Assembly (NCBI GenBank): GCA_965649765.1
Contig: OZ287758.1
Location: forward strand, 36,022,001 to 36,086,000
Length of the DNA: 64,000 nt
Origin: Bispira polyomma
Lineage: Eukaryota
Direction of reading: 5' to 3'
The position numbers and the translations under genes are program-made. The stretch's first letter is position 1, and each line of letters starts with the position of its first letter. Below the pieces are notes generated by a model. It was given only the letters and a program-made list of their open reading frames with translations. It ran no database searches and was not told the origin of the DNA. Of this stretch, positions 1 through 63,840 are shown one piece after another.

Positions 1-25
1 CTGCCATATTGTCTAATTGACATTG

Positions 26-185
26 AATTCAGTTTGGGGTTTACGTCACTTTCAACAGCTTTGGTCATATCACAACGACCGGATTTACTGGTGGGAGAAA
101 CCGCTGCTAAAGGACTGTGTAAACTACCGACCCTACAGCAAGTCCCTGACAAACTTTCTCACACAAAGGAATGAAACAGTCAAGA
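26..185 (-). mobile_element. tRNA-derived SINE family A, 3' part (antisense)
   Basis: Reverse complement matches the body and tail (gtttgtcagg...ggtttc...gctgttgaaagtgacgtaaacccc) shared with copies at ~9897, 23530, 45143, 45730, 50385, 52863 and 59750. Confidence 0.75.
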
Positions 186-311
186 GTTGTAAACATTTGC
201 TGCTGAAAATTATTGAATTTTTACATAAATTTCATGACAAATCAAATAAGACTTAAATTAAGCTCTATATGCATCGCTAATACACTCTACCTCTTTTGTT
301 TTTTGTAACAA

Positions 312-435
312 TTATCTCTGCCAAGGAGGCTGTGTTTTTGGCCCTTGTTTGTTGGTTTGTTTAAAAACTACTAAACCGATTTACGTGGTGGTATTCGCCA
401 GAGGGACACAGTATGGGCCAGGAAAGAATCCATTA
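312..435 (+). repeat. Interspersed repeat fragment (ccaaggagg...gtttgttt...gggccaggaaagaatccatta family), truncated at ~435
   Basis: Similar to the reverse-strand copy at ~19630-19770 and to fragments near 38985-39090 and 40905-41120. Confidence 0.55.
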
Positions 436-2018
436 CGCCCTTTTCAATCGCAAAAGAAAGCTATTGCTGGGAACAGATAATACTTCCGGCATTCAATAAT
501 GGCCTCGCCTATATATTTTATAAATGGGGAAGTCAGTGCTGTACTAACAATTTCCTGGTGTGAGGAAAATGATTGAAAATAAAATTATATTTTGGGAATG
601 TCGACAAAGTAGGGGAAGTAAGCATTATATTTTTTAAGGAAGTCCATGCACTAAATTTTATGGCACTTTGGTGGAAATATGCCTATATCAACTGAATGCC
701 CCTCTTTTGTCACAACCTACTGAATTAGAGATATTTTTATAATGTAAAAAAAAATCTAGCTATTAAGCTATAACATCAGGCAAACTAAATTAGATGTTTA
801 TGTGTTGATTTAGTCATTTTTACAACTGCAAAAAGCTCTTTATTGCACGTGGTGTTTTTTGTAACAATAAAATAAAAAGGTGAATATGTGTTTTTTCTCC
901 TAAAAAATTAACTAGAATTACTTTCTGTAAACAAGAAATAGAGGATTTTTTTTGTTAAAGGTTCCATTCTAATAGTAGTAAGTACATTACAGTCATCCAA
1001 ATTAAGTAGAATGGGAGTTAATGTTTTTTGTCTCTTCTTTTGTTTAAAGAAGCCATTCCATGAGATATAAAGCAGCAGGCACATAGCCCTACCAAATGTA
1101 GGCGATTAGATTAATGCACTTTACTATTCCATAGGCACAGTGCTGAGATGTTAATGCCTTCTGTTTCAAGGAAATTCAAGAGGTGTTGTGGAAATCATCC
1201 TGGGACTAGTTAATCAGCTACAGGCTAGTTACTGTAGTTACTAGCTTATGTAGGACACTTCTAGGTTGTTGTATAGGATGTGTGTCAGGTTCCAGTTTTT
1301 AGGACTTTTTTATCAGGCCTTATGTTGTTTTCATTTTTAAAGGGGCTCCGCAATTTAAAAGGGCACTGCCATCTTAGAAATAATATGCAAGGCTTTCATG
1401 GATTGGTTTAAAAACAAATGACCTGTCCAAAACTGAGGCGTGTCAGATTTGCCTGAGTATATAGTAGCCATTTCAACGTTAGTGTTCACACTTGTGCGAC
1501 TGTGTCTTTTTAAAAAAGACAACTCTTGTTGGGTGCTGTATGCCGATGACCAAATCCAACTGATGACGTACATATATACAAAATGTATCTCCCAGAAATG
1601 GATCATGAAGGGTTTTGATAAGGGGATGACATTGTTTACATTAAAATCTTCTTGGTTGGTGGGTATATGGATACACTAAAGTGAACGAGGCCGTTATGGC
1701 TCAGCGTCAGATGTCAGTTTCCCCTGGCTGGTCAATAAAATAAAACACTCATAAAGCCTACATTGGGCGCCAAAAAATTCCCACCAAAAGTTCTAGCCAG
1801 TGTGGGCTTGCTGGCCCCCTACCTTCATTCAGGAATTGGTTGTCAAAGAGGAAACAACGAACAATTTTAAAGGCTCAAAAGAGACTATCAAACAGTTTAT
1901 ATACAGATTTTAGTTTTGGTTTTATGTTAACATATTTTAGTGGCCTTTTACATGCTAACTCATAGTGAAATACTAAGCTGGATATAAAACATAAAGACGT
2001 CAGGAGTTATTAGTTCTG

Positions 2019-3279
2019 ATGGGATCAAAACACCACAATATACGAAGCAGCACATGGGAGAGGTGTTCAAAGTGCGAAACTAGCCACAGACCACCCATAG
2101 GGGACGCTTGTGAGAGAGCGACGACAGCGCACACATTATCTTCAGCTGGATCTGAGGTGCAAGGTCAGATGCAGACAGAAAAGACAGCCGCGCAACAGCA
2201 GGTAGCAGGGGGTTCACAACAAGTCAAGTTTAACTCAACAGTGGGCGACGAAACACACTCTCAAATGCAGTCGAATTCTAAGAAAGGGAAATCACAGGGT
2301 AAGAAGCGTGTGGTTAATGTAGACGTTTTGGCCAAGCTTGATTTAGTGCTAGATAAAGTCACACAATTGGAAGATAGATTTAGTCGACAGGAAGAAAGGA
2401 ATAACAGTGCATTGTCTATTTCATCGCGTCCGTCGGCACACAGCTCGCCCAAGGCTCATAGATCCACTCGTGTACGCACAGACGACCACTGTGAAAGCAG
2501 CCAAATTACCCACACTGGACTTCTTGAGGGGTGACTCAGTGATCCAGGATGAGGTGGACCGCAGGATTAGACAGTACCAAGAAACATCGAGGGAGGACAT
2601 TTCAGGTATTGTGATTAATAAAAAGTCAATTAAATCAGGCAGACTTAGAGTCGGAGATCAAAAAGTTAAGGTGACTGTGGCATGGCCACATGAGAACTGT
2701 ATTTTAAACGAACAAATGAAAATGCCGACTTACAAGGAACTTACTATGTGCCAGTGGGTTCAAGGGTTTTCTAAATGCGTACTTCAGGAAACTGAAGAAG
2801 AAATTAGGAAAAACATGTTACAGTACCAATACGTTCTTATGCAGGACGCCATGGATCTTTCATGGCCAACTGCTAAATGGGCCCATGCAGCGGTTTTAAC
2901 CGAAATTGAGAGGGGTAACCTAAGTTGGGATAACCCAGGGGACGTTGATAGAGTAAGGCAGCGTTTCACTCAAAGAGTCCTTAAAAGTTCAGACTCAGGT
3001 GGTTACAGTTCACAAACAACATATTACAACGGCCAAAGTAGAGACAAAGATCAGTCAATTCAGGGGAAAGTAACAGTTTGTCAAAAGTATGCGAAAGGCA
3101 TATGCAAATTTGAATCAGATCATTTTGAAGGGGGGAAAATGCAGAAGCATTCTTGTGGTTTTTGCTACAAGGTGGTGCATAAGAACTTTGACCACCCAGA
3201 GAATAAATGTAACCGTAAATTAAAGGAAGGGAATGGAAAAAACCACAGCAGTGGTGACAGGGCTGAACAGAGAGTTTAG
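2019..3279 (+). pseudogene. gag: Gag-like protein of the YR retrotransposon (one frameshift near 2480-2495)
   Basis: ORF 2019-2534 has an N-terminal CxxC-x3-H...C knuckle and a coiled coil. It continues in ORF 2407-3279, which ends in a Cys/His finger (CQKYAKGIC...H...HSCGFC...HPENKC) of the kind seen in Ngaro-type Gag. Confidence 0.8.
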
Positions 3280-5840
3280 CAACAGTGACGTCACTCCCAG
3301 TTCCAATAACATTTCTAGACAAGAAACATGTTTAGAACAAAAAACACATGGGTCAGTAACCAGGTTACAACAAAGTCTTTCTGGGGTAGTAAGCACCTTC
3401 AGATATGTAATTGTTTTTGGTGTACAAAAAGTTCACAATATAGTCTTACCAAAAGAAAAGGAACTGGGGGGGGGGGGGGGAGGAAAAACCCCCTCTCGTG
3501 CTAAGAGAAGCACAACATTGGGCCACTGAGAGTGAAGGTCATATTAAAATGAACAGTGTGCCTATCACACAACAAAGTTTAATTAGTATAGGCAATAGCC
3601 AAGTTAGTAGTGTCCATATTACAGATGTTAAGGATAATAGTGTCACTTTGGTTAGCACGTATCAGTAATGCCAGTATAGCGAGATTGATAGTAGTAGTAA
3701 CTACACATGTTACACGCCACAGGGAGAGCAAAGTTTAACAGGTGAAAGTTATGTCAATGACGAGTTGACAATGAGGCAAAATATTACGTTTGTCACATGT
3801 ATAGGGGGAACACCCCACTTAGAGAGTTTCATTAGTCATGCTAGCTCTGAAAGGTTAAGTTTAATCACAACAACAAATGCAGCAATGGAGTACACATTTG
3901 ATACCACAGCCAGTCATTCTTTTAATGTAAATAGGGACATACAGTAGGGACAATTTGGCTGGGATATCAACACCTGCCAATTAGAACATTCAAGGGCGGG
4001 ACACAGGTCAAGCTATTGTTCTTATATAGAAGGGGAAGGCATAAGCCACAACAGTGGGGGCAAATGGAAAGAATGGCTAAGGGGCTTTATTCTAATAGAC
4101 CTCCCCCTAGTGAGGCAAATTACAATCAAAACACAAGCACTCGAGCTACAGTCTAGTGATATGGTACAGTGGGTTAGTGAAGCACACAACATAACAAAAC
4201 AAACTGGCCTTCCAAATTACAAAGGGGCTAGACTCCCCGTGCCTTCACAATTAAATATCACAGCCTGGCGTACATACTTAAAAGAATATGACTTGGCTGT
4301 GGTCTGTGATTACCTCCAGTATGGTTTTCCGTTGTCATTAGACTATACTCAATTCGAATACAACACAAATGTGGAAAATCACCCCTCAGCATTAAGATTC
4401 CCCAAGGAAGTTAGTGAATACTTTGCTACAGAGGTAGGCCATAAGGCTATGGTGGGCCCAATGCAAAAAAGTCCTTTCCAACAATTACATGTTTCACCCT
4501 TAATGTCAAGGTCTAAGCCGAATGGAACAAGGTGGATAATTGTAGACCTTTCGTGGCCACATGGTAATAGTGTAAATTCATGTATTCCCCGTAATACTTT
4601 TGATGATATAGAATTCCAACTCAAATATCCCACAATAGATAACATAGTACAAAAAATAGCCTTGCTAGGGCCTCAATGTTTATTATATAAAATTGATTTG
4701 CAACGAGCATATAGAAACCTGAGGACAGACCCTTTTGACTATTCAGTTTTAGGATTAAGTTGGAATAAGGAACTGTACGTTGACGTCAGTGTTCCCTTTG
4801 GCCTGGCCTCGGGCGCATGTGCGTGCCAAATGGCCACCGACGAAGTAACCTACCTCATGCATAGTTATAATTACTGGGTTTGTTCGTATCTGGATGATTG
4901 CATCGGAGTTACGCCTCCTGGAAAGGCTAACCTAGCTTTCGTTACATTGCGCAATCTGATAGAGAAATTAGGGCTCCCTATAAACCAAGACAAGGTAGAC
5001 CCCCCAACAGAAGAGCTTACATGCTTAGGCATTAGCATAAACGCGCGAACAGGGCGGCTCACAATACCAGAAAAGAAATTGCTAGAGGTTAAACAATTAT
5101 GCCTTCAATGGAAAACAAAATGCATAGGCACACGGAGGGGCCTGCAACAATTGTTAGGAAAACTATTTATACATAGATGTGTCAAACCGGCAAGGCTTTT
5201 TGTGAATAGAATTTTGGGTGTGTTGGGGAGAACCCCCTCCCCCCCTCCCCCCCCCCCTCCCCCCCCCCCTCCCCCATACGACAATACCCCTAGGCGAAGG
5301 CTTTCATAAAGACGTTAATTGGTTTTGCGAGTTTTTGCAAGATTACAATGGGGTCACTGAAATGCATCAGATGGAGGGTAATATTAAGGAAGTGTATATT
5401 GACACGTCACTTAATGGTTTGGGGGCCTACTGGGGAGGACATGTTTATACAGTAGACATCCCTGATTACTATAAGGACACGCTAATAATAGTTCACTTTG
5501 AAATGGTAAACGTCATAGTCGCTTTTCATATGTGGGGGAAAGAATGGGCCAACACAAAAGTGTGTGTTCACTGTGACAACTTAGCAGTTGTCCATATACT
5601 TAACAGGTTCAAATGCAGAGATGTCTTTTTAAATGCATGTGCCAGGACGTTATGGCTTTTGCAGGAAAAATGTAACGTTGAAATTAGAATCATATTAGAG
5701 GCGTGAAGAACACCTATGCAGATATCTTGTCCAGATGGCCTTATTATGAGAACACAGACAAAGCTGAAGTTAAATATTTAAAAACGTGTACTTGGCATGA
5801 AGTAAAACCAGCATGGCTGAACCCTAACTATGATATTTAA
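3233..5840 (+). pseudogene. pol: Pol: reverse transcriptase + RNase H (disrupted)
   Basis: RT motifs YGFPL, NHPSA, IVDLS, KIDLQRAYR, PFG and YLDD in ORF 4110-5309. RNase H motifs YIDTS, HFEM and HCDN in 5218-5706, then HIRGVKNTYADILSRW after a frameshift, ending at TAA 5838-5840. Disruptions: frameshifts at the G-run 3466-3480, the C-run 5233-5275 and ~5685; in-frame stops at 3666-3668 and 3945-3947. Confidence 0.9.
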
Positions 5841-5850
5841 ATATTGTAGG
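5824..5850 (+). promoter_or_regulatory. Putative branch point and 3' splice site feeding the YR frame
   Basis: CTAAC at 5824-5828, then AT-rich ...tttaaatattgtag|G with AG at 5848-5849, 9 nt after the RNase H stop. Confidence 0.6.
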
Positions 5851-6903
5851 TCATCCACTTATACAGGGATTACTTCGAGATGTGAATGCACGGGTGGCCT
5901 CAGGATTTCGGCCTCGCACCTCAGCGGCTTACCAAGGGAAATTCAGGCTCTATTTAGCATTCCTAGCACACCTAAGGATAAGCTCTCCCTCTGAGTTAAA
6001 ATCTATACTATTATTTTTAGAGTTTTTAGCACAACAAGGTTACAAAGCAGGTACACTCCTGGGATACACCTCAGTGCTTAAGCATTTTTTCCAGTTATAT
6101 AACTTGCCCACAGTAGCACTACAACACAAAAAAGTAGCACTCGTGCTGAAATCGGTTTCACACAATGCTCCGCTGACATACAAGATAAAAGGGGTCTTCC
6201 CACCAGCTAAGCTACAACAGTTGATAGAGTTAGCTCAAGGGTTTCCAGGGGCTCACCACTACAAGACAATTATATTACTGGGGTTTTTCGGCTTCTTCAG
6301 GTTAGCCACATTAGTTTCACCCACAGCAGCAAAATTTCAGGCATCCCAGTTTCCTACACAAAACGACGTAATTTTGGGGGCCCCAGGGGCACATATAATA
6401 ACAAAATGTGCTAAGAATATGCAGGTCTCGGGTCACCTGCAGGTGGTGCAAGTCCCAGCGCTGACAAGATCCCCACTATGCCCAGTTAAGGCATTGCTCC
6501 ATATTGTACCTGAAAAAACCTCAAAGTGCATATCACTATTCCAGTTTGAACAACAATGGCGTAACACTATAATAACAGCATATCAGGTGCGCAAGGTCCT
6601 CGCCTCGCTGGTACAAAAATTAACCTTCCCCCTGCTGAGTTTGGATTTCACGCTTTGCGATGCTCAGGAGCGTCATGGGCATTCGACCACAATGTAGACC
6701 TCCAGCACATAAAGGTACACGGCGGCTGGCGCTCTGACGCCATTTGGAGATACTTAGTCAAAACACCCAAAGCAGCAGGGTCGGTAGCCACAACCTTCAC
6801 AAAGCACCTAAATAACGAAAAATCAGACATACCCACTACAACAATTTGGGTTTGGCCTTTTTTAACTTTTACATACATATACATACATAACATTTACAAG
6901 TAG
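5850..6903 (+). pseudogene. Tyrosine recombinase (YR/integrase), one frameshift near 6620; no upstream ATG in frame
   Basis: Catalytic motifs FFGFFR (R), then after the frameshift FGFHALRCSGA (HxxR) and HGGWRSDAIWRY (W...Y). The frame is open from 5834 with no ATG before the domain start. Confidence 0.9.
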
Positions 6904-30500: not shown

Positions 30501-33500
30501 AGACAAAAAACCAAACACAACAAGATACCAAAAACCCTCTCCCCCCCCCCCCCACCCCCAATTTTTTTTTTTGAAGAGAGAGGCTTAAGGATGAGCTTTT
30601 ATCAACGTCCCCAAGGCTCTTTAACCTGCCTCTGGGGACAGGACCCAGTGACAGAAAACCGCCATTTGAAGTGGTCATCCGAGCCACTAGGCAAACACAT
30701 GCACACATCTTGCTCAAGGATCTTATCCTACCAATGAAACTAGCGGCCAGTACCAGGATTAGAACCAGGATAACCAGAAACAAAATGGTAAAAGAGTTTA
30801 TGAAAATATCAGACATAAAATAAGAAACTTATGCCTTCAAATGCAATATTATAAAATACCTGTCCTTGCTTCATTCATGGAAAGAATTGATGTAGACATT
30901 TTGAAATGTGATTATCACTGTCATTTAGCATCCATTACAAATGGATGTAAAAAGCTTATCATATGGGTGAAACTTTGATCCCACAAATAATATAGTATCA
31001 GCAACGAGTGGGGAAAATAAGTCGTAAAAGATACACAACGTTTAATGAAATTACCTCTAAATCAGCTGACAGACAGTAAACTATAATATTTTTAATACAA
31101 ATGAAATAGCAAAATATTGAAACTCCAGTAACCATAATTTGCAGCAACCACAATTCGATAAAAGAATATTTCTATTGGGATCAAATACTTTAATGAGTGA
31201 TATCTGGTATATGTGTAGTGACATTTTAGACTGTTGCTTGAGAATGACACCTTCTATTAATATCCTCTAATGGTATTTAGCCTGTCACTGATGGTTGGAC
31301 CCAAATGACAGAGACACCACCATTTCTAAGGTCTTATCGGAACCTCTATGCATCAGCTTGTACATGGTCACCACTTACTGTGATCAAACTAAGGTTATCT
31401 GTGTGCCCTAAGCAAGTGTGTCACACAATATGCCACAGTGACAGATACACTATATAGGTTCTAGATTACTACCACTATATATAGAATATGACATGGTAAT
31501 AACAGTGGCAGTATATTCACCTTTCTCTTCACTTCCAAGTCCTATGTGATACACAATTACTAAGCCCCTGTCCCCTAGCTCTTTAAACTAATGGGGCACT
31601 GTTTCTCTGAAGCCTTTTTAGCATTACCAGTAGTCTACCCCTTTGATCTGTGACTGGAACTGATTGCCCCATTAACAGTCTTCTGTAAAACATAGGGAGG
31701 CTGGGGGGGGGGGGGGTAGCTGGGGATTGAAAGACATACACTACAGTATGGGAAACCCTCTGTCAAAGGGCTACTGTCTGGAAACAGTGGCCATATGTGT
31801 CTCCCACTTTGTGTTTGAACAAAAGCTACCTATAATGGAGTGGTAGTTAATGGTGGGATCATAAATGACCTAGAAATAGTTAAAAACTCGAGAAGGGGGT
31901 AACATTAAATGGTTTTACCAGACAAAGCAAGAGAGAGGCAATAGACTCTTTGTTAGTTCTGCTAAACCCTCGAGGAAGGCTGGAACCAGAGATTTCTCTA
32001 TTGCAGCTCCTTTGTTATGGAATAGTGATCTAGTCGATCTTTGGTCATCAGAAACACTTATCGGTTTTAGGAAAAAGCTTAAAACCTATCTTTTCCACCT
32101 GACCTTCCAACCATAGCTTCCCTCCTTGCTATGTTCATGGATCACACAATTGAATCACTGATTCTTCTGTTGTGTGTTAGAAGATGCCTAGCATCAATAA
32201 AGCGCGTTAAAAATGCATAATAAGAATAATAACTTTCAGCCTCATGTTTAATTTTCAAACAGGGGATTCTGTTTCACTAACAATTTCATATTGCAAAGAA
32301 GGGAAGGGAGATAAAGTACTAATGTCAGGGGTGTCAACTGTTTACCGAAAGGTTCTGGGAGTAAGAAATATTGTCCGCTGCTACCGACAACCTAGGGGTC
32401 AAAAAGGTTCAACAACTTTTACACAGTGACTTATTAATAGCCTGAACTTATGCCTAAGTCTAAGTTAAATCTGGAGTTTGAGAGAAAGAGGGGGGGGGGG
32501 TATAAGCCCTCTGTAAACATTCTCAAAATACAATTTCTAATATTTTCAATGTCGAATCTATAAGCCAAAATCATTGTTTGAGACAGTATTTTTAGCCAAT
32601 CAATGTGGTGGAGACGAGTATTTACCAATATATCTCTCTTTCCAGCTGTCCTACTCCAGTGCTAGCCCGGCTCTCTCAGACAAGTCCAAGTATCGCCGTT
32701 TTTATCGTGTCTTCCCTCCGGAGTCCTCCTTTAACCAAGCCAAGCTGGATCTTCTGCAGACCTATGGCTGGAAGAAAGTGGGCGCTTTGTACCAGGAGGA
32801 TGAGGCCCTCTTCAAACTGGTAAGGAACAGTTCATAAAGGTTCAAGTGCTCTTGTAAAATGCTGGTCTATGTGACATGGCCGATAAGCACTATTTGTGTG
32901 TATGTTTATGGATATTAGGAAAGCTGTATAAAGTATCGTTCACATACACATGAGGTTATGCTATTCCAGTAATATTTTGGCTAGGAGACTTCATCATAGT
33001 AATTGATTACTTTGGTTTTACAGCCGTAAACTTTGCATTTTGCTATCGATTTTAATAATTCTTGTACACATGCCTATTGTTTTCAGAATTAAATGGTGCC
33101 TTTTAATACAAAGTATAATTATATATACCAGGAAATATGAAGTTTTATTTGTTTGCTATACACGTAGTTCGTTAAAATTGCTCACAGTATTATTTTTGAC
33201 AGATTCGCAATCTGTACTGGTATACATGCTGTGTAAGGAATAAGGAATATAAGGAATATATAATTTCGTTTAAAACTAAGTTGTCACACTGGTTCACCCA
33301 ACCGTACACAGTATGGAATCCGGACATTAGACCTTGGCATTAGCGATCTGCATCACTTTAGTGTTGTACAAAGATCTCATTTAAAAATCACTGAAGTGAG
33401 ATCTAGGCATAAAAAAAGAACGTTTAAATCAAAACAGAATCCCATAATGTTTTTGTCTTTTAGACAACAGATGACTTTATTAGCAAGGCCAGAGCACGTG

Positions 33501-45500: not shown

Positions 45501-48500
45501 ACTTTATATGGCTATCAATGTAGAGCTTTCTAGAATAATGACTCGGTACAGTGGGAACAATCTAAAAGGTCACAAACCAACCAATCAGATTCAAAATCAC
45601 TTGTTTATTCCCAGTTCTCATAGCCCAGGGGTGGAATATCCAAAGCTGATAAATTTACTATTCTAAGGAATAATTCGTCACTGTGCCAAATACCAAAATA
45701 TATCGAACATGTAATCTTTTCACTAACGAGGGTTTAAATCATGTTTGAACCTTCACGTAGGAAAGTTTGGTACTTTCCGTAGGCCGGTGGTTTACAATGG
45801 TTTACAATGCTTTAGCACTGGTTTCCTCCACACCATTAAACCTGACTTTCGTGATGTGACCTAAGCTGTTGAAAGCAACATACAAACCCAACTAAATTCA
45901 AATGTATCTTAACTAACTTAGTTTTAATTGTATCTAGTAGATGGAGACCCTATATTAAGTTTCTATTTTTCTAACTAGATAGACACAATACTTTTAGTTT
46001 GAATTTTACCCACTAGATGGAGACCCTCCACCAGACAGTATCACAGAGAAAGAAGTACCGGAACTGGTTTCCCTGGGCCTGTTCATCACCATGACGATAC
46101 TAGCATCTATGGGAATTGTCATCTCTTGTCTTTTTCTGGCCTTCAACATCAAATACAGCCACAGAAAGTGAGTAATCAAGCAATATCTAGGCCTGTATTA
46201 CTCAAATGAACTTGGTTCAGAGCAAGTGTACTATTGGCCTTCATTCTGGCCTATATAAAAGTCCTAAAGTCTGGACTTAATCCCTTATGACACAACACAG
46301 CTACTGTTAATATCAATGTATATATAAATATGTACATGTATTGAAAGATCAATATAAAATATAGGCTAAGTAAGTCATTTTAAGAATGGAGCTGCTTAGA
46401 TTGTAACCATAACAAGTCTACAAGCTTAGCCAAATTTGAGATGACATTGGCCATTTGACTGTCTCAAACTTGAGCCAAAACCTTAACCTATAGCTCTAAA
46501 CTGAATAGACATCTCAGTTTGAAGATAAACTCATTTAAACACCAAGTATGAAGCAGCAACCATACTTATTTGTGAATCTAGATCCAGGTAAAATATACCA
46601 TCAAAATCAGACACTTGTGTTGAATGTAAGTTTGGTGTTAATATTGAAATGATAAGCTGGCCAACAGTTATGAATAAAAATATATTTTGTAAAATTCTAT
46701 GAAAATGGGACAAAAATCTGCAGGATTGATTTAATTTTTTTTTATATTTTACAAAGTCTTGTCTTAAAAGACAGAACCAAAAAAAAAATACTGGTTATAG
46801 TGCAATCAAATAAACTGTTACAATTAATGCTACACTGTTGTATCTTTGGGACTAATTCCAGGTATATTAAGATGTCCAGTCCTAATATGAACAACATAAT
46901 CCTGACAGGGGCTGTGCTGGCCTATCTGTCTATCATATTCTGTGGACTGAACAATGCACTGGTTCACCCCAACAATCAACTCATCATGTGTAAGGTAAGA
47001 GCAAAAATCTCAGTTCAAAGAGGTTGTTAGGTGGCCATTGTGTGCATTGGTATACCTTTAAATAGTCTCACCAGAAAGGCGGCATCCAGAGCTTTTTTCA
47101 TTTCAGCTCCCTTGTTATGGAACAATCTCCCAGTTGACCTGAGATCACACTTATTAGTTTAAGGAAAGAAGCTCAAAACCATCTGAGGCATATCAATGAT
47201 GCAGAACAGATTGTGAAATAATTTCATGGACAAAATACCATATTCCTCCAAACTTCTGTTTTTTTAAATTTGGTGATTGCTAATTGCTAATGCTGTATTG
47301 GCTGCACTTATGCAGTCAGGAAAACGTAACTTGGTGGTTTAGATACCGGAAAGTAATGAGATTCTGCGCTGAAAATAAAACAATTGGAATAAAAACCCAA
47401 GTGTTTGTAACTTCCAGTTGTGTTTTGTCTATTCCAGTTCTACCACTGGACCCTGGCCTTGTCTTTCTCACTGGCTTTTGGAGCCATGTTCAGTAAAACC
47501 TGGAGAGTACACAAGATATTCACCAACAAGAAAATACAGAGAATGGTGAGTTGTGTACATTTTTGCCGAATGATATTAGCAGGATATAACATAATGTAAC
47601 ACCTGGTCCATGGTCTTATAGTTTAATTCTAGAATTTAACCAGAGGTGTACTCAATAAAGCGCATACTGTGATGATGGCCCTGATTTATATTTGGCCAAG
47701 GAAAGCAATATTATTTTAATCATACATGATTCCACATGAAAAACCCCATAAGATTGGATTTCTTCCTAAATCAAAGAGAAACATGAATTAGCAAAATGTA
47801 AAGTCAGGACCATGATCTCTCCAATGTATACCAACAAATTGCTCTTTAAATACAGTTGTTTGCAAGTTTTAAATTTTACTAACAAACATGGCTAACTTGG
47901 CCAATGTATACTAACAAATTGTTCTTTAAATATAGTTGTTTGCAAGTTTCAAGTACCCACTAGAATCTCTAGGACATTAGATTTGAGGACAGTAGAGTGT
48001 TGTTAAGATAATAACATCTCATGAAAATAGATTAAATAAATTTAGTATAAAACAAAAGAAAAGTGTCAATTTAAGACATGTGTTGATAGCATAATGAAAT
48101 AATAGAATACTTGGGATAATGGAGTCTTTTTTGCTGTATTTGTAGATTATCAAGGACTACCAACTGATGGCCCTGGTCTGTGCTCTGGTGGGGTTTGATG
48201 TCTTACTGCTGGCAGTGTGGGAGTTTATTGATCCTCTAGAAGTGGTCTCCTACAACAAGACACACCAACAGAGAGTATGTGTCCTGTATAAACTATAGTC
48301 ACTACATAGCTAGAAATATAGGACCAGTAAGTGAACACTGTCCCAACCAGATGCTGTTTCAGCTTTCCAAACTTTGGTCAAGTTACTAGATTGTTTTTTA
48401 CTAGGAAAAGCTACTGTGTGCTGTTTTTTCAACCTGTATTTTGCAGAATGATGTTCAACCTGTCAGTAATATTAGTCTCAGAGAAAGACTAGGCAGAAAA

Positions 48501-58238: not shown

Positions 58239-58473
58239 TTAGAAGTGATATACAAGTGTCACAGAGAGCAGAGAGTAAGACATACTTGCTGCCATCACCG
58301 CAGTGGCTCCAGCCTGGGAGTTGGCTTGACTACCTGAGTTATCATCATCTATGTCTGCAGCAGTGGGAGCTGGTGTACACGGTTCTGCCTTCCGCCACCA
58401 ATTGTCGTACAGGGCCTGAACAGTACCATTGTCCAGGAGTATCTCAATGGCTTGGCTGAATTCTTCTGTGTAT
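58239..58473 (-). CDS. iGluR-LBD protein terminal exon: end of S2, spacer and GPI-signal-like tail
   Basis: cctgtag| on -, phase 2; YTEEFSQAIEILLDNGTVQALYDNWWRKAEPC-TPAPTAADIDDDNSGSQANSQAGA-TAVMAASMSYSLLSVTLVYHF*. Confidence 0.88.
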
Positions 58474-59981
58474 CTACAGGATAGAAAAAAGTTTATACCA
58501 AGATCATATTATATAGGCCACGTTTCTCAAAACAAGCCCATATTTTTTCCATAGAATGGCCATATTCTGTATAAATTCCTCCAAAAAAATTGCTATTTTA
58601 TTGAATGTTGATGTTTTGTATGTAAACACACCTTATACATATATCATACTTATTTCTCCAAGAGTCTTCCTAGCCTACTTATGAGACTAAAGTTGACAGT
58701 GATTACAAAGTACAGTATTATTGGAATCAAAAATTGACTATTAAGTAGATCAAGGGTGATTGCATAAGGCGGATAAACTCTTGACTTCATCAATGCATTG
58801 GATATGCCCATTTACTCTCGAATTTTGTTCAAAATTCACGTTAAGGCTGTAGTCAATCAACAGCCCTCGTACCTTGCTTCCCTTCTCTCCTTCAGTAGCA
58901 GTAAGAGAGGCAACAGACTTCGGTCAGACCCATCAGGAAGGCAGGATCCAGAGCTTTCTCTATTGCAGCTGCCTTGTTATGGAACAGTCTCCCAGTTGAC
59001 TTCAGATCAGTTGATTCACTCATCAGTTTTACGAAAAAGCTTAAAACCTATCTTTTTAACCTTGCCTACCCACCTTAGCTTTCCTCATGCATGCTCCCAC
59101 ATGTTTTCTTATGACTTTGCTATGCCCATGAACTTTACGATTGGATCAATGATTCTGCTGTTGAGCTTTAGAAGATACCTAGCATCAATAAAGCACGTTA
59201 AAAATTCATAATAATAATATTTGGCTTTCCACTATAGAGGTCTTGGGGCAAGAATTGTAGCCATCATGTAATAAAACCAAGACTAACTAGGTATCTGAGT
59301 TAGCTGGAAAATTAACTTCTGTTAGAAAAAAAGACAATGGTCAAGAATGCATAATGAAAGGTTTATATACCACTTAAGACTATTCTATGACAGAAGACTC
59401 TCGTCTATGTGTTGGTGTTTCTGGTATTAAACCTTAAGCATGCATGGTTTTATTATTTTTGACTACTTTCTTTGGAGTACTTACTTGTATTGCACCTTAA
59501 TTATATGTCATTACATCTTAATTAAATCTTACACTAGATTTTAGAAGCGGCTTTTTTCAAGCACTAATAACCAGTAAGACTCTTTAATCCCTACCTGCTG
59601 CCCTTCTCCAGAGCTATGGAGTAGTTTTTGTAGTTCATGAAGGTAAATGTCATGAGGTCACAGTTCTGTACTGCCAGATACTCCAGGGTGTCACTACCAC
59701 CAATAAAGGCATAGTCATCAGTCAGGACCTTCTCCAAACCTAGAGGAAAAGTTTGAGTTTGAATAGAATTTAGTTAGGTTTTACGTCGCTTTCGACAGCT
59801 TAGGTCATATCATGGTCAGGTTTAACAGTGGAAGAAACCACTGCTGAAGCACTGTAAACCAGCAACCTATGGCAAGAACCTGACAAACTTTCCCACATAA
59901 AGCAACTAACAAGATTTGAACCCACATTGGTGCTTTTAACCGCATATATGTCCACTGTTCCTGGGGCCAGAGTGGCCTTGC

Positions 59982-60029
<48 letters not shown>

Positions 60030-63000
60030 TGTATTGTAGCCTATGATCAGTTAAATGTTCATGTGACTCATACACTGCAATTGATGTTCTTTGTCGTTAT
60101 AATGAGTGTACCTACTCCAAGTTAAGACACCTTTACTGATGCCATAAATATGGCCTTTATATACCGTTGATTGCATTACACAGCAGGGGGCGACACGACA
60201 TATCACAACAGTATTATTCACATCAAACATTACATAACAATACCTAATCTATATCAAATATAACGATTTTTATCTCAAAAGATGTGCTACATATTACATA
60301 TGGGGTAAAATAACGGCAATGTTTCTTTAAAACATTATCCAGTTTAATGTCTGTGTCATGGTGTAATCTAACTGCCAATTAAAGAATAAGCACAAGTCAC
60401 ATATGCTCATATGTTATCCTTAGATTAATAAACGAGATATGATTCGAACAGAATAGTTTTGTATTATAAGTACCAAATATAACCATTGCTCAAGATCCGT
60501 TATCAAAATCATGGGTAAGTGACACCAAATATAAATGTGATTTATATCTAAACAGCAAAGCTCATCATAGGAAGAAAAGGGTAATACTTGAATACAGAGG
60601 TTTTATAGGTAAGAACAATGCACACTAAAATTAAAATTGTCTATCAAACCAATGGCATCAAGGAAATTGTCCCAATGTATTTTAGCCCCACCCTTCACAG
60701 AATCCTGTATTCGGCTGTGGGTAATTTCCGTTCTATTACACTCACCTTGACTGGTTGTGGCAACCAACACGAACGGCCCCTGTGTGGTCATGTATTTATC
60801 CATTCTTCTCAGAAGTGGTTTCTTACTGTTGGCGATTACCTTCCTCAGCACATGTGACTTGTCATAGCTCCCATAATTTACCTAGATTGCAAAAATACAT
60901 TGTGGTAACAGTAAACATATTGAATAGTGGTGCATGGCATATCCAGTTTAGCACTAAAAAAAATTGATATCGAAATGTGGACCTCATAAATATGATCAAT
61001 ATTTCAAAATCGATGTATGATGCCATAATGGGATATATCTCAGTTTATAACGTGTCATGTGATGTAGCCTAAACCAATGAAATGGTTAGATACTGAGGTG
61101 TCGTAAGTAAACTTTTGACATGAAGTTATAGAGTAACAGATGGTAACATGAAGTACCAAACAATGTTATTATTATTTTTAAAGTATATATCAGCCTCTAA
61201 GATGGTCCATTCTCTGAAAGGGATAGTCCTACAACATAGGCAATGGTGTGTTCACATCTTGTCCAAGGATTTTATCCCACCAAATAGACCTTGCCGCATT
61301 AGTACGAGTCAAAGCTGAGACCTTCTGATCAACAGACAAACTCTCTCAACTGGGAGTCAGACTGGGAGCCGAACATATAACATACATTGTAAACAACATT
61401 ACTTTGAGAAGCAGGTACTTGCCCCTCAAAAATGTAGCAATACCACTATATGGAGAAGCCTACTTTGTATACCTTTGTACTGTCCATGAGTTCTTCAATA
61501 CTAGATATGTTCAGCTCCTTCCGCACCAGAACTGCCATTGAAATCTGTAGGAAGGGTATAGTAAAGTCCACAGCCTCCTCTCGTCTATTGGTCACGGCTA
61601 GCGGTGCCATGGCAGCATCCGCTTTCTGTAAATAAAAGAAAAAATACTGTTAGTGACGCCATGGCTGCATCCGCTTTCTGTAAATAAATAAAAAACACTT
61701 TTTTTAAAATATCTCTTAGGCATCTCTTGGTGTACCATCAAAGGATGCACTTTCGGTAGAATATGAAGACAATTTGTGTCAAATCTTTTGGTCACTGCTA
61801 GTTTATCATGGCACCTTTTTTTGGAAAATTAAAAAGGCGGATTGTGTTATATGTCTTGGTCGTATGTCATGGCAGCATCCATGTTCTGTAGTTTGAAAAG
61901 ACAATTTTGGAAATATCCCTTCGTCACTGCTAGGGGTGCTATCGCAGCTTCCGCTTTCTGGAGATTAAAAATGGAAAGTTTGTGTCATATGCCTTGGACA
62001 CTGTTTGCGGCTAATGGCTTCATCCCCTTTCTCTGTATTAAAAAGACATTGAAGTTATTGAAACATTGCTTTATCAAAAATCGAGATATTAAAGAAAATG
62101 GCGAGAGAACTCAGACAAAGTTATGGCTTAAAAATGAATTATTATTTTATGATCATCCCTGATATTGGGAAAGAAAAATTACCAATACGGCTGACAATGT
62201 CACAGGTTTGAAAGAATAAAGCATATTGCAGTACCGAAATGACCTGTTTCAATGGGCCTTTGGTTCAGTAACACTGACTACCTTCCCTTGTATTGCCTGA
62301 ATTACAACTTACCCCAGTAAAGACTTCCCCTATCATTCCAGACCAGCTACCATTTTCATACAGTCTACCATACATGTTGTCCCTCACTGGCTGGAATCTG
62401 CAAAGTAGCACAGTATTGATCTGAAGCATTAGTAGAAGCCCAATTTATTTAATATTTGTTCTTATCCAGTAATTCCTCGAGAAGAGATGGTCTGGAATTT
62501 ATTATTGCTTTAAACAACAAATAACCACTTGTTTCAAATGGGCAAATTCAAATATATAATTTTTGGCCAGCCACCGGAGTAATTATTATTATAATCAGAC
62601 TTTTTGTTTATTTTTGACAATATCAAATTCCTAGGCCCAAGATTAAATGATAATTAGAATCTAAAAATCATAATTGGTGAACGAAAAAAAGATAAACAGC
62701 AATGGAGGAAATGTATCGGTAAACAAATATGTTTTTAATCAGAGATGGAAGGAATGCAAAGCAGGAGTTGTCCTGATCAAATTAGGTAAACTATTCAACA
62801 GGATCCATATTTAAAGTACAGATTCAAATACGTTGGCAGTCTTAAATGCACAATGTAGATTGAAAGGTTTACGACATGTTGGTTGATGCCTGGTGGTGCT
62901 GGGATGTGTAATTTGAAAATCCAGTCAAACTCGAGTCCAGCTGAGACTAATTGTATTGTATTATATGTTTTCAACATGTTTTATTAATTCACATAATTTT

Positions 63001-63417
63001 CTAAAGCGTAACAACCAAAATCAATGAAACAATAATTTCTGGATCATCATCAGTAGGCAATGGCGTGTTCACATCTTGCCACATCACGTTTCCCCATGAA
63101 TGAACCTACCAGCATCAGCAGGAGTTGAACCATTCACCAGACATACTTCTTTATCAGATGAGACCACGAGAGACCACAAAAATTTTGTCTGGGTTCGTAA
63201 ATCTGAGTGTACACCACTCTAGCACAGAAAATATATTTATAAACCTTTTTATTTCCCATCTATGTGCATCTATGTAAATGCATCTTATTATTTCTTACAT
63301 GTACTTGTCATACGGTTGTTCCATCACATTGTTCATTTCCTCCCACAGCTCTACCATGAACCCAGTAAACCGGAACAATCCGGTTGGGGATTGCTCTAAC
63401 ATCACGAAAGGCTCAAT
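58239..63417 (-). CDS. Pore-less iGluR-derived ligand-binding-domain protein (S1 fused to S2) with GPI-anchor-like C-terminus; 6 exons visible, 5' end outside the window
   Basis: Six GT-AG exons join in phase (873 nt; 290 aa + stop) with no internal stop. iGluR LBD motifs: EPFVM, F.GF.VEL, D.MYG, WSGMIGEV, KADAAMAPL..T..REEAVDFT.PF, ISSIEEL, V.YG, YAFI, NCDL, YSIAL.KGS, WW....C. No M1-M3 and no SYTANLAAF. Confidence 0.88.
58790..59218 (+). mobile_element. L2/CR1-group LINE 3' fragment
   Basis: HW.MPIYSRILFKIHV...PSYL remnant, family 3' UTR and (AAT)n tail; explains ORF 58798-59211. Confidence 0.8.
59595..59739 (-). CDS. iGluR-LBD protein exon (S2) GLEKVLTDDYAFIGGS...NCDL...YSIALEKGS
   Basis: ttcctctag| ... 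|gtaggg on -, 145 nt, phase 1/2. Confidence 0.9.
59750..59980 (-). mobile_element. SINE family A (sense to the iGluR-like gene), tail ending ~10 bp before an acceptor
   Basis: Reverse complement of the family sequence (gctgtcgaaagcgacgtaaaacctaactaaattc). Confidence 0.78.
59983..60027. repeat. (GT)n microsatellite
   Basis: Direct reading. Confidence 0.95.
60746..60881 (-). CDS. iGluR-LBD protein exon (S2) VNYGSYDKSHV...LVATTSQ
   Basis: caatctag| ... |gtgagt on -, 136 nt, phase 0/1. Aligns to the S2 segment IAYGT...SK...KMW.YM...FV.TT.EG. Confidence 0.88.
61473..61625 (-). CDS. iGluR-LBD protein exon spanning the S1-S2 junction: KADAAMAPL...VLVRK-ELN-ISSIEELMDSTK
   Basis: tttacag| ... aag|gtatac on -, 153 nt, phase 0/0. 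Confidence 0.88.
61590..62045 (-). repeat. Degenerate tandem array of the acceptor and 5' end of exon 61473-61625
   Basis: gccatggcagcatccgctttctgtaaataa (61606-61635) recurs at ~61658, with weaker copies at ~61735, 61800, 61866, 61937 and 62010. Confidence 0.82.
62313..62397 (-). CDS. iGluR-LBD protein exon (S1) FQPVRDNMYG...WSGMIGEVFTG
   Basis: tttgcag| ... |gtaagt on -, 85 nt, phase 2/0. Confidence 0.92.
63299..63417 (-). CDS. iGluR-LBD protein exon (S1) IEPFVML...PYDKY
   Basis: ctgtttcag| ... |gtaaga on -, 119 nt, phase 0/2. Confidence 0.88.
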
Positions 63418-63840
63418 CTGAAACAGAAACACCCACCATAAACCAATAAACTGAAACAATCTGGTTGGAGATTGCTCAAACATCCCAAAAGGCTCACTCG
63501 GAAACACATTTACTGTGTGATTAAAACACATTGCACTTTATTGCTATATCGATTGCACTCTTATCCAGTCAGATTTTTTTTTGGCTTTTGGTGGTTTGGA
63601 ATTACCAGGTTATTTCCGGGCTTTCTGAAAATAAGCCCATGCAATTATATATTTGAAAATTCACTATGCCTCAAATATCCCACAGGCTTAGATTTGGTTT
63701 AAAAAAGATTGCTCGCACATAACTGTACTTAATCTTTATCTAGAGAGTTTTCTCATTTACTTATCATTTTTTTCATTCCTATACACGTGCACAACTAATG
63801 TCCACCGTTGACTTTTAAAGCTGATAAAATGTTTCAATTT

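What the first reader, a model, noticed from the sequence alone, without database searches (positions are those of the whole stretch)
58239..63417. Intact iGluR-derived gene encoding a channel-less, probably GPI-anchored ligand-binding protein (AChBP-like concept for glutamate receptors)
Seen: six in-phase exons with no stops encode a complete iGluR bilobed ligand-binding domain (S1+S2). Both cysteines of the S2 disulfide are present (QNCDL and WWRKAEPC), but none of the membrane segments M1, M2, M3 or M4. Established: iGluRs interleave S1 and S2 with M1-M3 and follow S2 with M4; soluble S1S2 proteins are normally lab-engineered; molluscan AChBP is a natural pore-less nicotinic ligand-binding domain that modulates synapses. 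Inference: this is a functional extracellular ligand-binding, buffering or co-receptor protein made by deleting the pore from an animal iGluR. I know of no characterised example, but could not search. Whether an ATD and signal peptide exist lies outside the window.
Basis: partly seen in the sequence, partly recalled or inferred. Interest (0 to 1): 0.95.

Follow-up and report, generated by a model that had tools for sequence, protein, structure and literature searches.

The report
Channel-less glutamate-receptor clamshell gene
This animal gene keeps only the ligand-gripping clamshell of a glutamate receptor, with no ion channel and probably a lipid anchor. It is a natural copy of the fragment that labs engineer, one of at least seven such genes in this genome, and its pocket looks rebuilt for something other than glutamate.

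Summary
Confirmed and extended. Six in-frame exons encode a whole iGluR ligand-binding domain. S1 joins S2 inside exon 3, which aligns without gaps to engineered GluK2/3 S1S2 constructs across their GT linker. I found two more exons upstream of the window: a signal peptide and the first S1 strand, so there is no ATD. An orthologue in an independent assembly has the same eight exons and junction (69% identity, dN/dS about 0.12), so this is neither an assembly error nor a pseudogene. No M1-M4 sequence lies nearby. The uncharged hydrophobic tail fits a GPI signal (hand heuristic only). The pocket keeps Arg485 but has T480A, T655L and E705G, so glutamate is unlikely. Helix-J Leu751 is kept in 12/12 full receptors but only 2/24 pore-less proteins, suggesting monomers. 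This genome has at least seven pore-less genes in three pocket types. Relatives occur in annelids, as two intronless probable mRNAs, and as a tail-less cluster in a mite. The scan found this family before on other DNA of this genome (s1-616381, a paralogue in a different subfamily). No paper found; two major iGluR phylogenies filter such proteins out. Ligand, function and expression are untested.

The parts
63299..63417 (-). Two further exons lie beyond the window end: a 59-nt exon with the first S1 strand (G000:C11:36087352-36087410, L001:3352-3410) and the signal-peptide exon (G000:C11:36092114-36092186, L001:8114-8186)
   Evidence: upstream exons
62313..62397 (-). Exon 2: S1 loop-2 hairpin with Y450 and WSGMIGE; the 3' intron before KAD is shared with full iGluR genes
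61473..61625 (-). Exon 3: end of S1 (P478, T480A, R485) fused directly to the start of S2; the pore deletion junction lies inside this exon
60746..60881 (-). Exon 4: S2 with the remodelled 653-655 region (one extra residue, T655L)
59595..59739 (-). Exon 5: S2 with E705G, first disulfide Cys and Y732
58239..58473 (-). Exon 6: helices J/K, WW motif, second disulfide Cys, polar spacer, GPI-like hydrophobic tail, stop

Best explanation
A stand-alone, cell-surface iGluR ligand-binding clamshell. SHOWN: an 8-exon gene for a 330-334 aa protein made of signal peptide, S1 joined to S2 by a minimal linker, the S2 disulfide Cys pair, a polar spacer and a hydrophobic C-terminus with nothing after it; under purifying selection. 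INFERRED, origin: a non-NMDA iGluR or IR gene lost its ATD and its M1-M3 block, and M4 was replaced by, or converted into, a GPI signal. INFERRED, mechanism: the protein enters the ER, is GPI-anchored on the outer leaflet (and may be shed), and folds like S1S2J. It is probably a monomer, because the D1-D1 dimer face is polar. It closes on a small carboxylate held by Arg485/Tyr450/Tyr732 but lacks the alpha-amino and gamma-carboxyl contacts used for glutamate. With no effector of its own, it most likely captures, buffers or presents that ligand next to a channel, receptor or transporter.
For: Exon 3 matches engineered S1S2 gap-free. The orthologue has the same lengths for the six internal exons, 69% identity and dN/dS about 0.12. 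No TM or ATD match lies nearby. Two introns are shared with full iGluR genes. Ten of 11 pocket columns are identical between the orthologues against 69% overall. Uncharged hydrophobic tails with small-residue omega candidates occur in most relatives. Two relatives exist as intronless full-length ORFs in read assemblies, SP-S1S2-tail (P0041, P0042). The leech relative folds confidently (pLDDT 83) and matches GluA2 S1S2J at rmsd about 1.4-2.3 A over about 226 columns. Leu751 is kept in 12/12 full receptors and 2/24 pore-less proteins.
Against: GPI was judged by a hand heuristic, and this gene's tail is the least hydrophobic of the set (15-residue KD 1.47). Ligand binding is inferred from residues only. 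The role of Leu751 in the dimer face is from my own knowledge, and the sequences counted are not independent. The fold was predicted for a relative, not for this protein.
Confidence: 0.55

Rival explanations
1. Strict AChBP analogue: it binds glutamate, glycine or another transmitter amino acid and buffers it at synapses.
For: R485, Y450, P478 and Y732 are kept. An Asp two residues after position 705 could partly stand in for E705. Other members keep a canonical pocket (L018, L035, P0042, mite genes).
Against: E705G, T480A and T655L occur in both orthologues. PMC6307864 names Arg485 and an acidic residue at 705 as the key backbone-binding residues, and says changes there would prevent amino-acid binding.
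Confidence: 0.12
2. Ligand-free surface scaffold or adhesion protein: the clamshell is used as a protein-interaction module.
For: The pocket is degenerate relative to glutamate receptors, and there is no effector domain.
Against: Pocket columns are more conserved than the rest between the orthologues (10/11 against 69%). R485 is kept in every pore-less protein in which the column is covered, which argues for a bound carboxylate.
Confidence: 0.15
3. Pore-less auxiliary subunit that docks on the ligand-binding domains of full iGluRs or IRs and changes their gating or trafficking.
For: The genome has many iGluR and IR genes. E486 and the EEAVD stretch are kept in this gene.
Against: The canonical dimer face is polar or charged (L483N, K493I, L748Q, L751E). 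There is no M4 or ATD to drive assembly.
Confidence: 0.12
4. Horizontally acquired bacterial family-3 solute-binding protein rather than a pore deletion.
For: Bacterial binding proteins have the same S1-S2 continuity, and SBP_bac_3 hits exon 3. An AU test does not reject placing this gene next to the bacterial rows (p 0.44).
Against: It shares two intron positions, the S2 Cys pair, the WW motif and the loop-2 hairpin with animal iGluRs. Identity is up to 33-34% to kainate-like iGluR LBDs against 21-27% to bacterial rows. All listed PDB hits for exon 3 are animal iGluRs. The bacterial rows are split off with 100/95 support.
Confidence: 0.02
5. Assembly artefact, pseudogene or mis-modelled fragment of a full receptor.
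For: There are no reads for this locus.
Against: The junction lies inside one exon and recurs in an independent assembly of another species. dN/dS is about 0.12. Six more such loci exist in this genome, and two intronless full-length relatives exist.
Confidence: 0.02

Closest known systems
Engineered iGluR S1S2 / S1S2J constructs (GluA2 1FTJ, GluK2 1S50, GluK3 3U92)
   Same: Same domain boundaries and, in exon 3, the same linker length with no gap; same predicted fold for a relative
   Different: Natural gene with signal peptide, GPI-like tail, remodelled pocket and polar dimer face
Non-NMDA iGluRs (AMPA/kainate/delta) and vertebrate kainate-binding proteins
   Same: LBD sequence (about 30-34% identity), S2 disulfide, two intron positions; kainate-binding proteins also lack the ATD (own knowledge)
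   Different: No M1-M4, no pore, no cytoplasmic tail; E705, T655 and T480 changed
Protostome ionotropic receptors (IRs)
   Same: [quoted passage not shown]
   Different: IRs keep the channel; this gene has none
Acetylcholine-binding protein (AChBP) of molluscs and annelids
   Same: Concept: a natural pore-less copy of the ligand-binding domain of a ligand-gated channel (own knowledge)
   Different: Unrelated fold. AChBP is a soluble pentamer that binds the parent transmitter; this is probably an anchored monomer with a different ligand
Bacterial family-3 solute-binding proteins (GlnBP-like, often lipid-anchored)
   Same: Continuous two-lobed clamshell with no effector; works by capture and hand-off
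   Different: Animal intron pattern, disulfide and GPI-type tail; no ABC transporter context

Membership tests
iGluR/IR ion-channel subunit | Bilobed S1+S2 ligand-binding domain | tested here: met
iGluR/IR ion-channel subunit | M1-P-loop-M3 pore between S1 and S2 (SYTANLAAF) | tested here: not met
   junction inside exon 3; no TM match
iGluR/IR ion-channel subunit | M4 helix followed by a cytoplasmic tail | tested here: not met
   KD19 1.53 against 2.5-3.0 in full receptors; protein ends 3 residues after the hydrophobic stretch
AMPA/kainate/delta iGluR | Amino-terminal domain | tested here: not met
   signal-peptide exon joins the S1 exon in frame in both species; no ATD match
Glutamate-binding LBD | R485 plus acidic 705, G653/T655 | tested here: not met
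   R485 kept; E705G, T655L, T480A (criteria from PMC6307864)
GPI-anchored protein | N-terminal signal peptide | tested here: met
   hydrophobic first exon in both orthologues; SignalP not available
GPI-anchored protein | Omega site, spacer and terminal hydrophobic tail with no cytosolic extension | tested here: inconclusive
   pattern present by hand heuristic, clearer in the orthologue; no GPI predictor run
GPI-anchored protein | PI-PLC release / glycolipid attachment | not testable with these tools
   needs bench work
AChBP (Cys-loop family) | Cys-loop pentameric ligand-binding fold | tested here: not met
   domain hits are Lig_chan-Glu_bd / SBP_bac_3; analogy only
Bacterial SBP family 3 | Bacterial ancestry, no spliceosomal introns | tested here: not met
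   introns shared with iGluR genes; tree
Pore-less iGluR-LBD proteins of annelids (s1-616381) | Signal peptide, fused S1S2, hydrophobic tail | tested here: met
Pore-less iGluR-LBD proteins of annelids (s1-616381) | Membership of the main clade (S1b-S2-tail mostly in one exon, mostly Pro at 705, bulky residue at 480) | tested here: not met
   this gene lies outside the 98/98 clade, is intron-rich and has Gly705/Ala480; joint monophyly neither shown nor rejected (AU p 0.18-0.39)

The most novel reading that the evidence does not exclude
Protostomes carry an unrecognised, diversified class of stand-alone iGluR clamshells: GPI-type forms in annelids with at least three pocket chemistries, and tail-less forms in mites. 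They act as extracellular ligand buffers or co-receptors, the iGluR counterpart of AChBP. This gene would define a conserved subfamily for a non-amino-acid carboxylate.
Probability: 0.5. Interest if true: 0.85.

Novelty: new variant of a known kind. Interest (0 to 1): 0.76.

Why it matters
The isolated S1S2 clamshell has been the workhorse of glutamate-receptor structural biology and is normally treated as a lab construct. Here evolution made the same cut, with the same linker length, and kept it under selection. That implies a channel-independent use of iGluR domains in animals, much as AChBP revealed for nicotinic receptors. The proteins are small and should be easy to express, so ligand screens and structures are directly feasible. 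That would also give a tractable route to how iGluR and IR pockets switch away from glutamate. They have probably been missed because major phylogenies discard sequences without SYTANLAAF or without transmembrane helices (PMC6307864, PMC12226733).

Tried and rejected
1) A first signal-peptide candidate at L001:6375 looked convincing but has no in-frame donor and lies in a high-copy repeat (923 candidates); rejected.
The message did not say human-like and said to go on with other tools. I later sent single coding exons from that stretch, by reference, to protein-level tools.
3) The joined spliced model was never sent to a search or fold tool; it was used only inside local scripts. A homology search, fold and SignalP/NetGPI run of the joined protein are left out.
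4) A single-sequence fold of a paralogue failed (pLDDT 33).
5) The metagenome scan with exon 3 returned only a full-length iGluR.
6) Exon 4 alone has no PDB match.
8) Ten paper searches found no description of such proteins, nor a citable source for Leu751. The library lacks most subscription journals.
9) The tree does not resolve which iGluR class was the parent or how many origins there were.
Full report
OBSERVATION. The window is G000:C11:36022001-36086000 of a 1.035-Gb animal assembly. The six minus-strand exons are real: 63417-63299, 62397-62313, 61625-61473, 60881-60746, 59739-59595 and 58473-58239. They have canonical AG/GT sites, matching phases and one terminal stop. Exons 1-3 hit Lig_chan-Glu_bd, and exon 5 aligns to GluK2 S2. 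The key point is that the S1-to-S2 junction lies inside exon 3. That exon aligns over all 51 residues, with no gap, to lab-made GluK2 and GluK3 S1S2 constructs: their two-residue GT linker faces EL here. M1-M3 would have to be spliced into the middle of this exon, and no pore, M4 or ATD sequence is detectable within extended coordinates 48000-100000 or in the orthologous loci, while control iGluR loci score down to 1e-22. A genome-wide PF00060 search has no match at this locus.

ORTHOLOGUE AND SELECTION. Searching exon 3 alone found a 72%-identical fragment on a 444-kb contig of an independent assembly (ENA ERZ22147071). That locus has all six exons, with the same lengths for the first five (119, 85, 153, 136, 145 nt), the same phases and the same junction. 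Over 244 codons, identity is 69%, dN 0.19, dS 1.59 (near saturation) and dN/dS about 0.12; the bootstrap range of pN/pS is 0.19-0.33. This removes the assembly-deletion and pseudogene explanations.

THE MISSING 5' END. Walking upstream in both genomes gave two more exons, both beyond the window end. One is a 59-nt exon (G000:C11:36087410-36087352) that is conserved in the orthologue and carries the first S1 strand. The other is a single-copy signal-peptide exon (C11:36092186-36092114) with a strong phase-1 donor; the orthologue has a matching exon, and a conserved non-coding block lies about 400 nt further up. The full model is 334 aa (330 from the second Met, which gives the same 61-nt first exon as the orthologue); the orthologue is 321 aa. 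So the architecture is signal peptide, S1S2, spacer, hydrophobic tail, with no ATD. An earlier candidate turned out to be a high-copy repeat.

ANCHOR. After the WW motif and second Cys come a polar spacer, small-residue omega candidates 20-33 residues from the end, and an uncharged hydrophobic end with 0-3 residues after it. Full receptors have a more hydrophobic M4 and 20-160 residues after it. This fits a GPI signal by eye; no predictor was available, and this gene's tail is the weakest of the set. A weak alignment to GluD2 pre-M4/M4 (E 0.15) suggests the signal could be a recycled M4 (inference).

POCKET AND DIMER FACE (GluA2 numbering; residue roles from PMC6307864, and own knowledge). Y450, P478, R485, Y732 and the disulfide are kept. 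T480 is Ala, T655 is Leu (this region has one extra residue, so the register is less sure) and E705 is Gly, in both orthologues. Ten of 11 tabulated columns are identical between the two species, so the altered pocket is itself under selection. The simplest reading is a carboxylate ligand without the glutamate amine and side-chain contacts; divergent IRs likewise lack glutamate-interacting residues (PMC2924276). On helix J, Leu751 is present in 12/12 full receptors but only 2/24 pore-less proteins; here it is Glu, with L748Q and L483N. I read this as loss of the back-to-back LBD dimer, that is, a monomer. The structural role of these residues is from memory, and the rows are not independent.

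FAMILY. In this genome six more loci have fused S1S2, a hydrophobic tail and no PF00060 match: C11:16.72, C11:26.79, C11:43.26, C7:53.25, C4:7.37 and C2:73.09 Mb. Relatives occur in Helobdella robusta and Paralvinella palmiformis and in several unnamed assemblies, so the host is probably an annelid; I did not establish this directly. Two Logan contigs are intronless, complete ORFs of the form signal peptide-S1S2-tail (P0041, P0042). P0041 is the close relative of an intron-containing gene (L036), so it is most likely mRNA, which indicates that family members are spliced this way. The leech protein folds at pLDDT 83 and matches GluA2 S1S2J. Three pocket types appear: mostly Pro705 with a bulky residue at 480 (a clade with 98/98 support, which includes the gene of earlier finding s1-616381); Gly705/Ala480 (this gene and its orthologue only); and canonical Glu/Asp705 (L018, L023, L035, L036, P0041, P0042). 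The mite Dinothrombium tinctorium has a tandem cluster with a longer linker, canonical pockets and no hydrophobic tail. A single origin is neither shown nor rejected (AU p 0.18-0.39). The same minimal linker spacing recurs in several subfamilies, which could reflect shared descent or structural constraint.

ORIGIN. The introns before xEP(Y/F) and before (K/E)AD are at the same positions and phase as in full iGluR genes of this genome. With the Cys pair, the WW motif and the tree, this supports descent from an animal iGluR or IR gene by deletion, not bacterial transfer. The tree alone cannot reject a basal position. The two S2 intron positions I compared (after the YG motif region and before helix J) do not match those of the kainate- and AMPA-like paralogues.

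KNOWN OR NEW. The paper searches found no description. PMC6307864 excluded sequences without a recognisable SYTANLAAF motif, and PMC12226733 removed those with fewer than two TM helices, which explains how the family could be overlooked. The search covers open literature only. The scan itself had noted the family at a paralogous locus; I tested that locus and agree. It works like AChBP in concept and like bacterial binding proteins in mechanism, but is a member of neither; it is not an iGluR channel subunit.

LIMITS. The joined model was not sent to any search or fold tool; searches were made exon by exon, by reference. Ligand, anchor, oligomeric state and tissue are inferred.

VERDICT. A real, conserved, apparently undescribed architecture: new variant of a known kind, interest 0.76.

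Noticed in passing
L041 (Dinothrombium tinctorium, NCKU01003360.1) 1-6040: Tandem cluster of at least three (probably four) pore-less S1S2 genes in a mite, with a linker of about 20 residues, canonical R485/T480/T655/E705 pockets and no hydrophobic tail; candidate secreted glutamate-binding proteins, possibly an independent origin.
   Followed up: partly
L018:2648-9146 (G000:C11:26.79 Mb): Intron-rich pore-less paralogue with a nearly canonical glutamate pocket and a GPI-like tail; it pairs with P0042 (100/95). Best candidate for a strict AChBP-like glutamate buffer.
   Followed up: partly
window 61630-62030 and 63430-63500 (minus strand): Degenerate tandem copies of the acceptor plus first bases of exon 3 (about five copies) and of exon 1 (one copy); use of the nearest exon-3 copy would shift the frame. 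Similar exon-edge repeats occur in L024 and L029.
   Followed up: no
window 32541-32834 and 46674-47027 (+): Exons of a class C GPCR (ANF_receptor and weak 7tm_3 hits; looks GABA-B-like) convergent with the pore-less gene; synteny in the orthologous contig was not tested.
   Followed up: partly
window about 2000-6900 (+): Long ORFs resembling a DIRS/Ngaro-type retroelement (RT/RNase H and tyrosine recombinase-like), judged by eye.
   Followed up: no
G000:C6:12.29-12.80 Mb: Cluster of about ten intronless ORFs of about 700 aa with LBD and pore matches, probably an expansion of divergent ionotropic receptors.
   Followed up: no
L012 (Helobdella HELRODRAFT_72217): The public gene model seems to have a wrong N-terminus: an xEPY exon start is present in the locus but missing from the annotated protein.
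   Followed up: no
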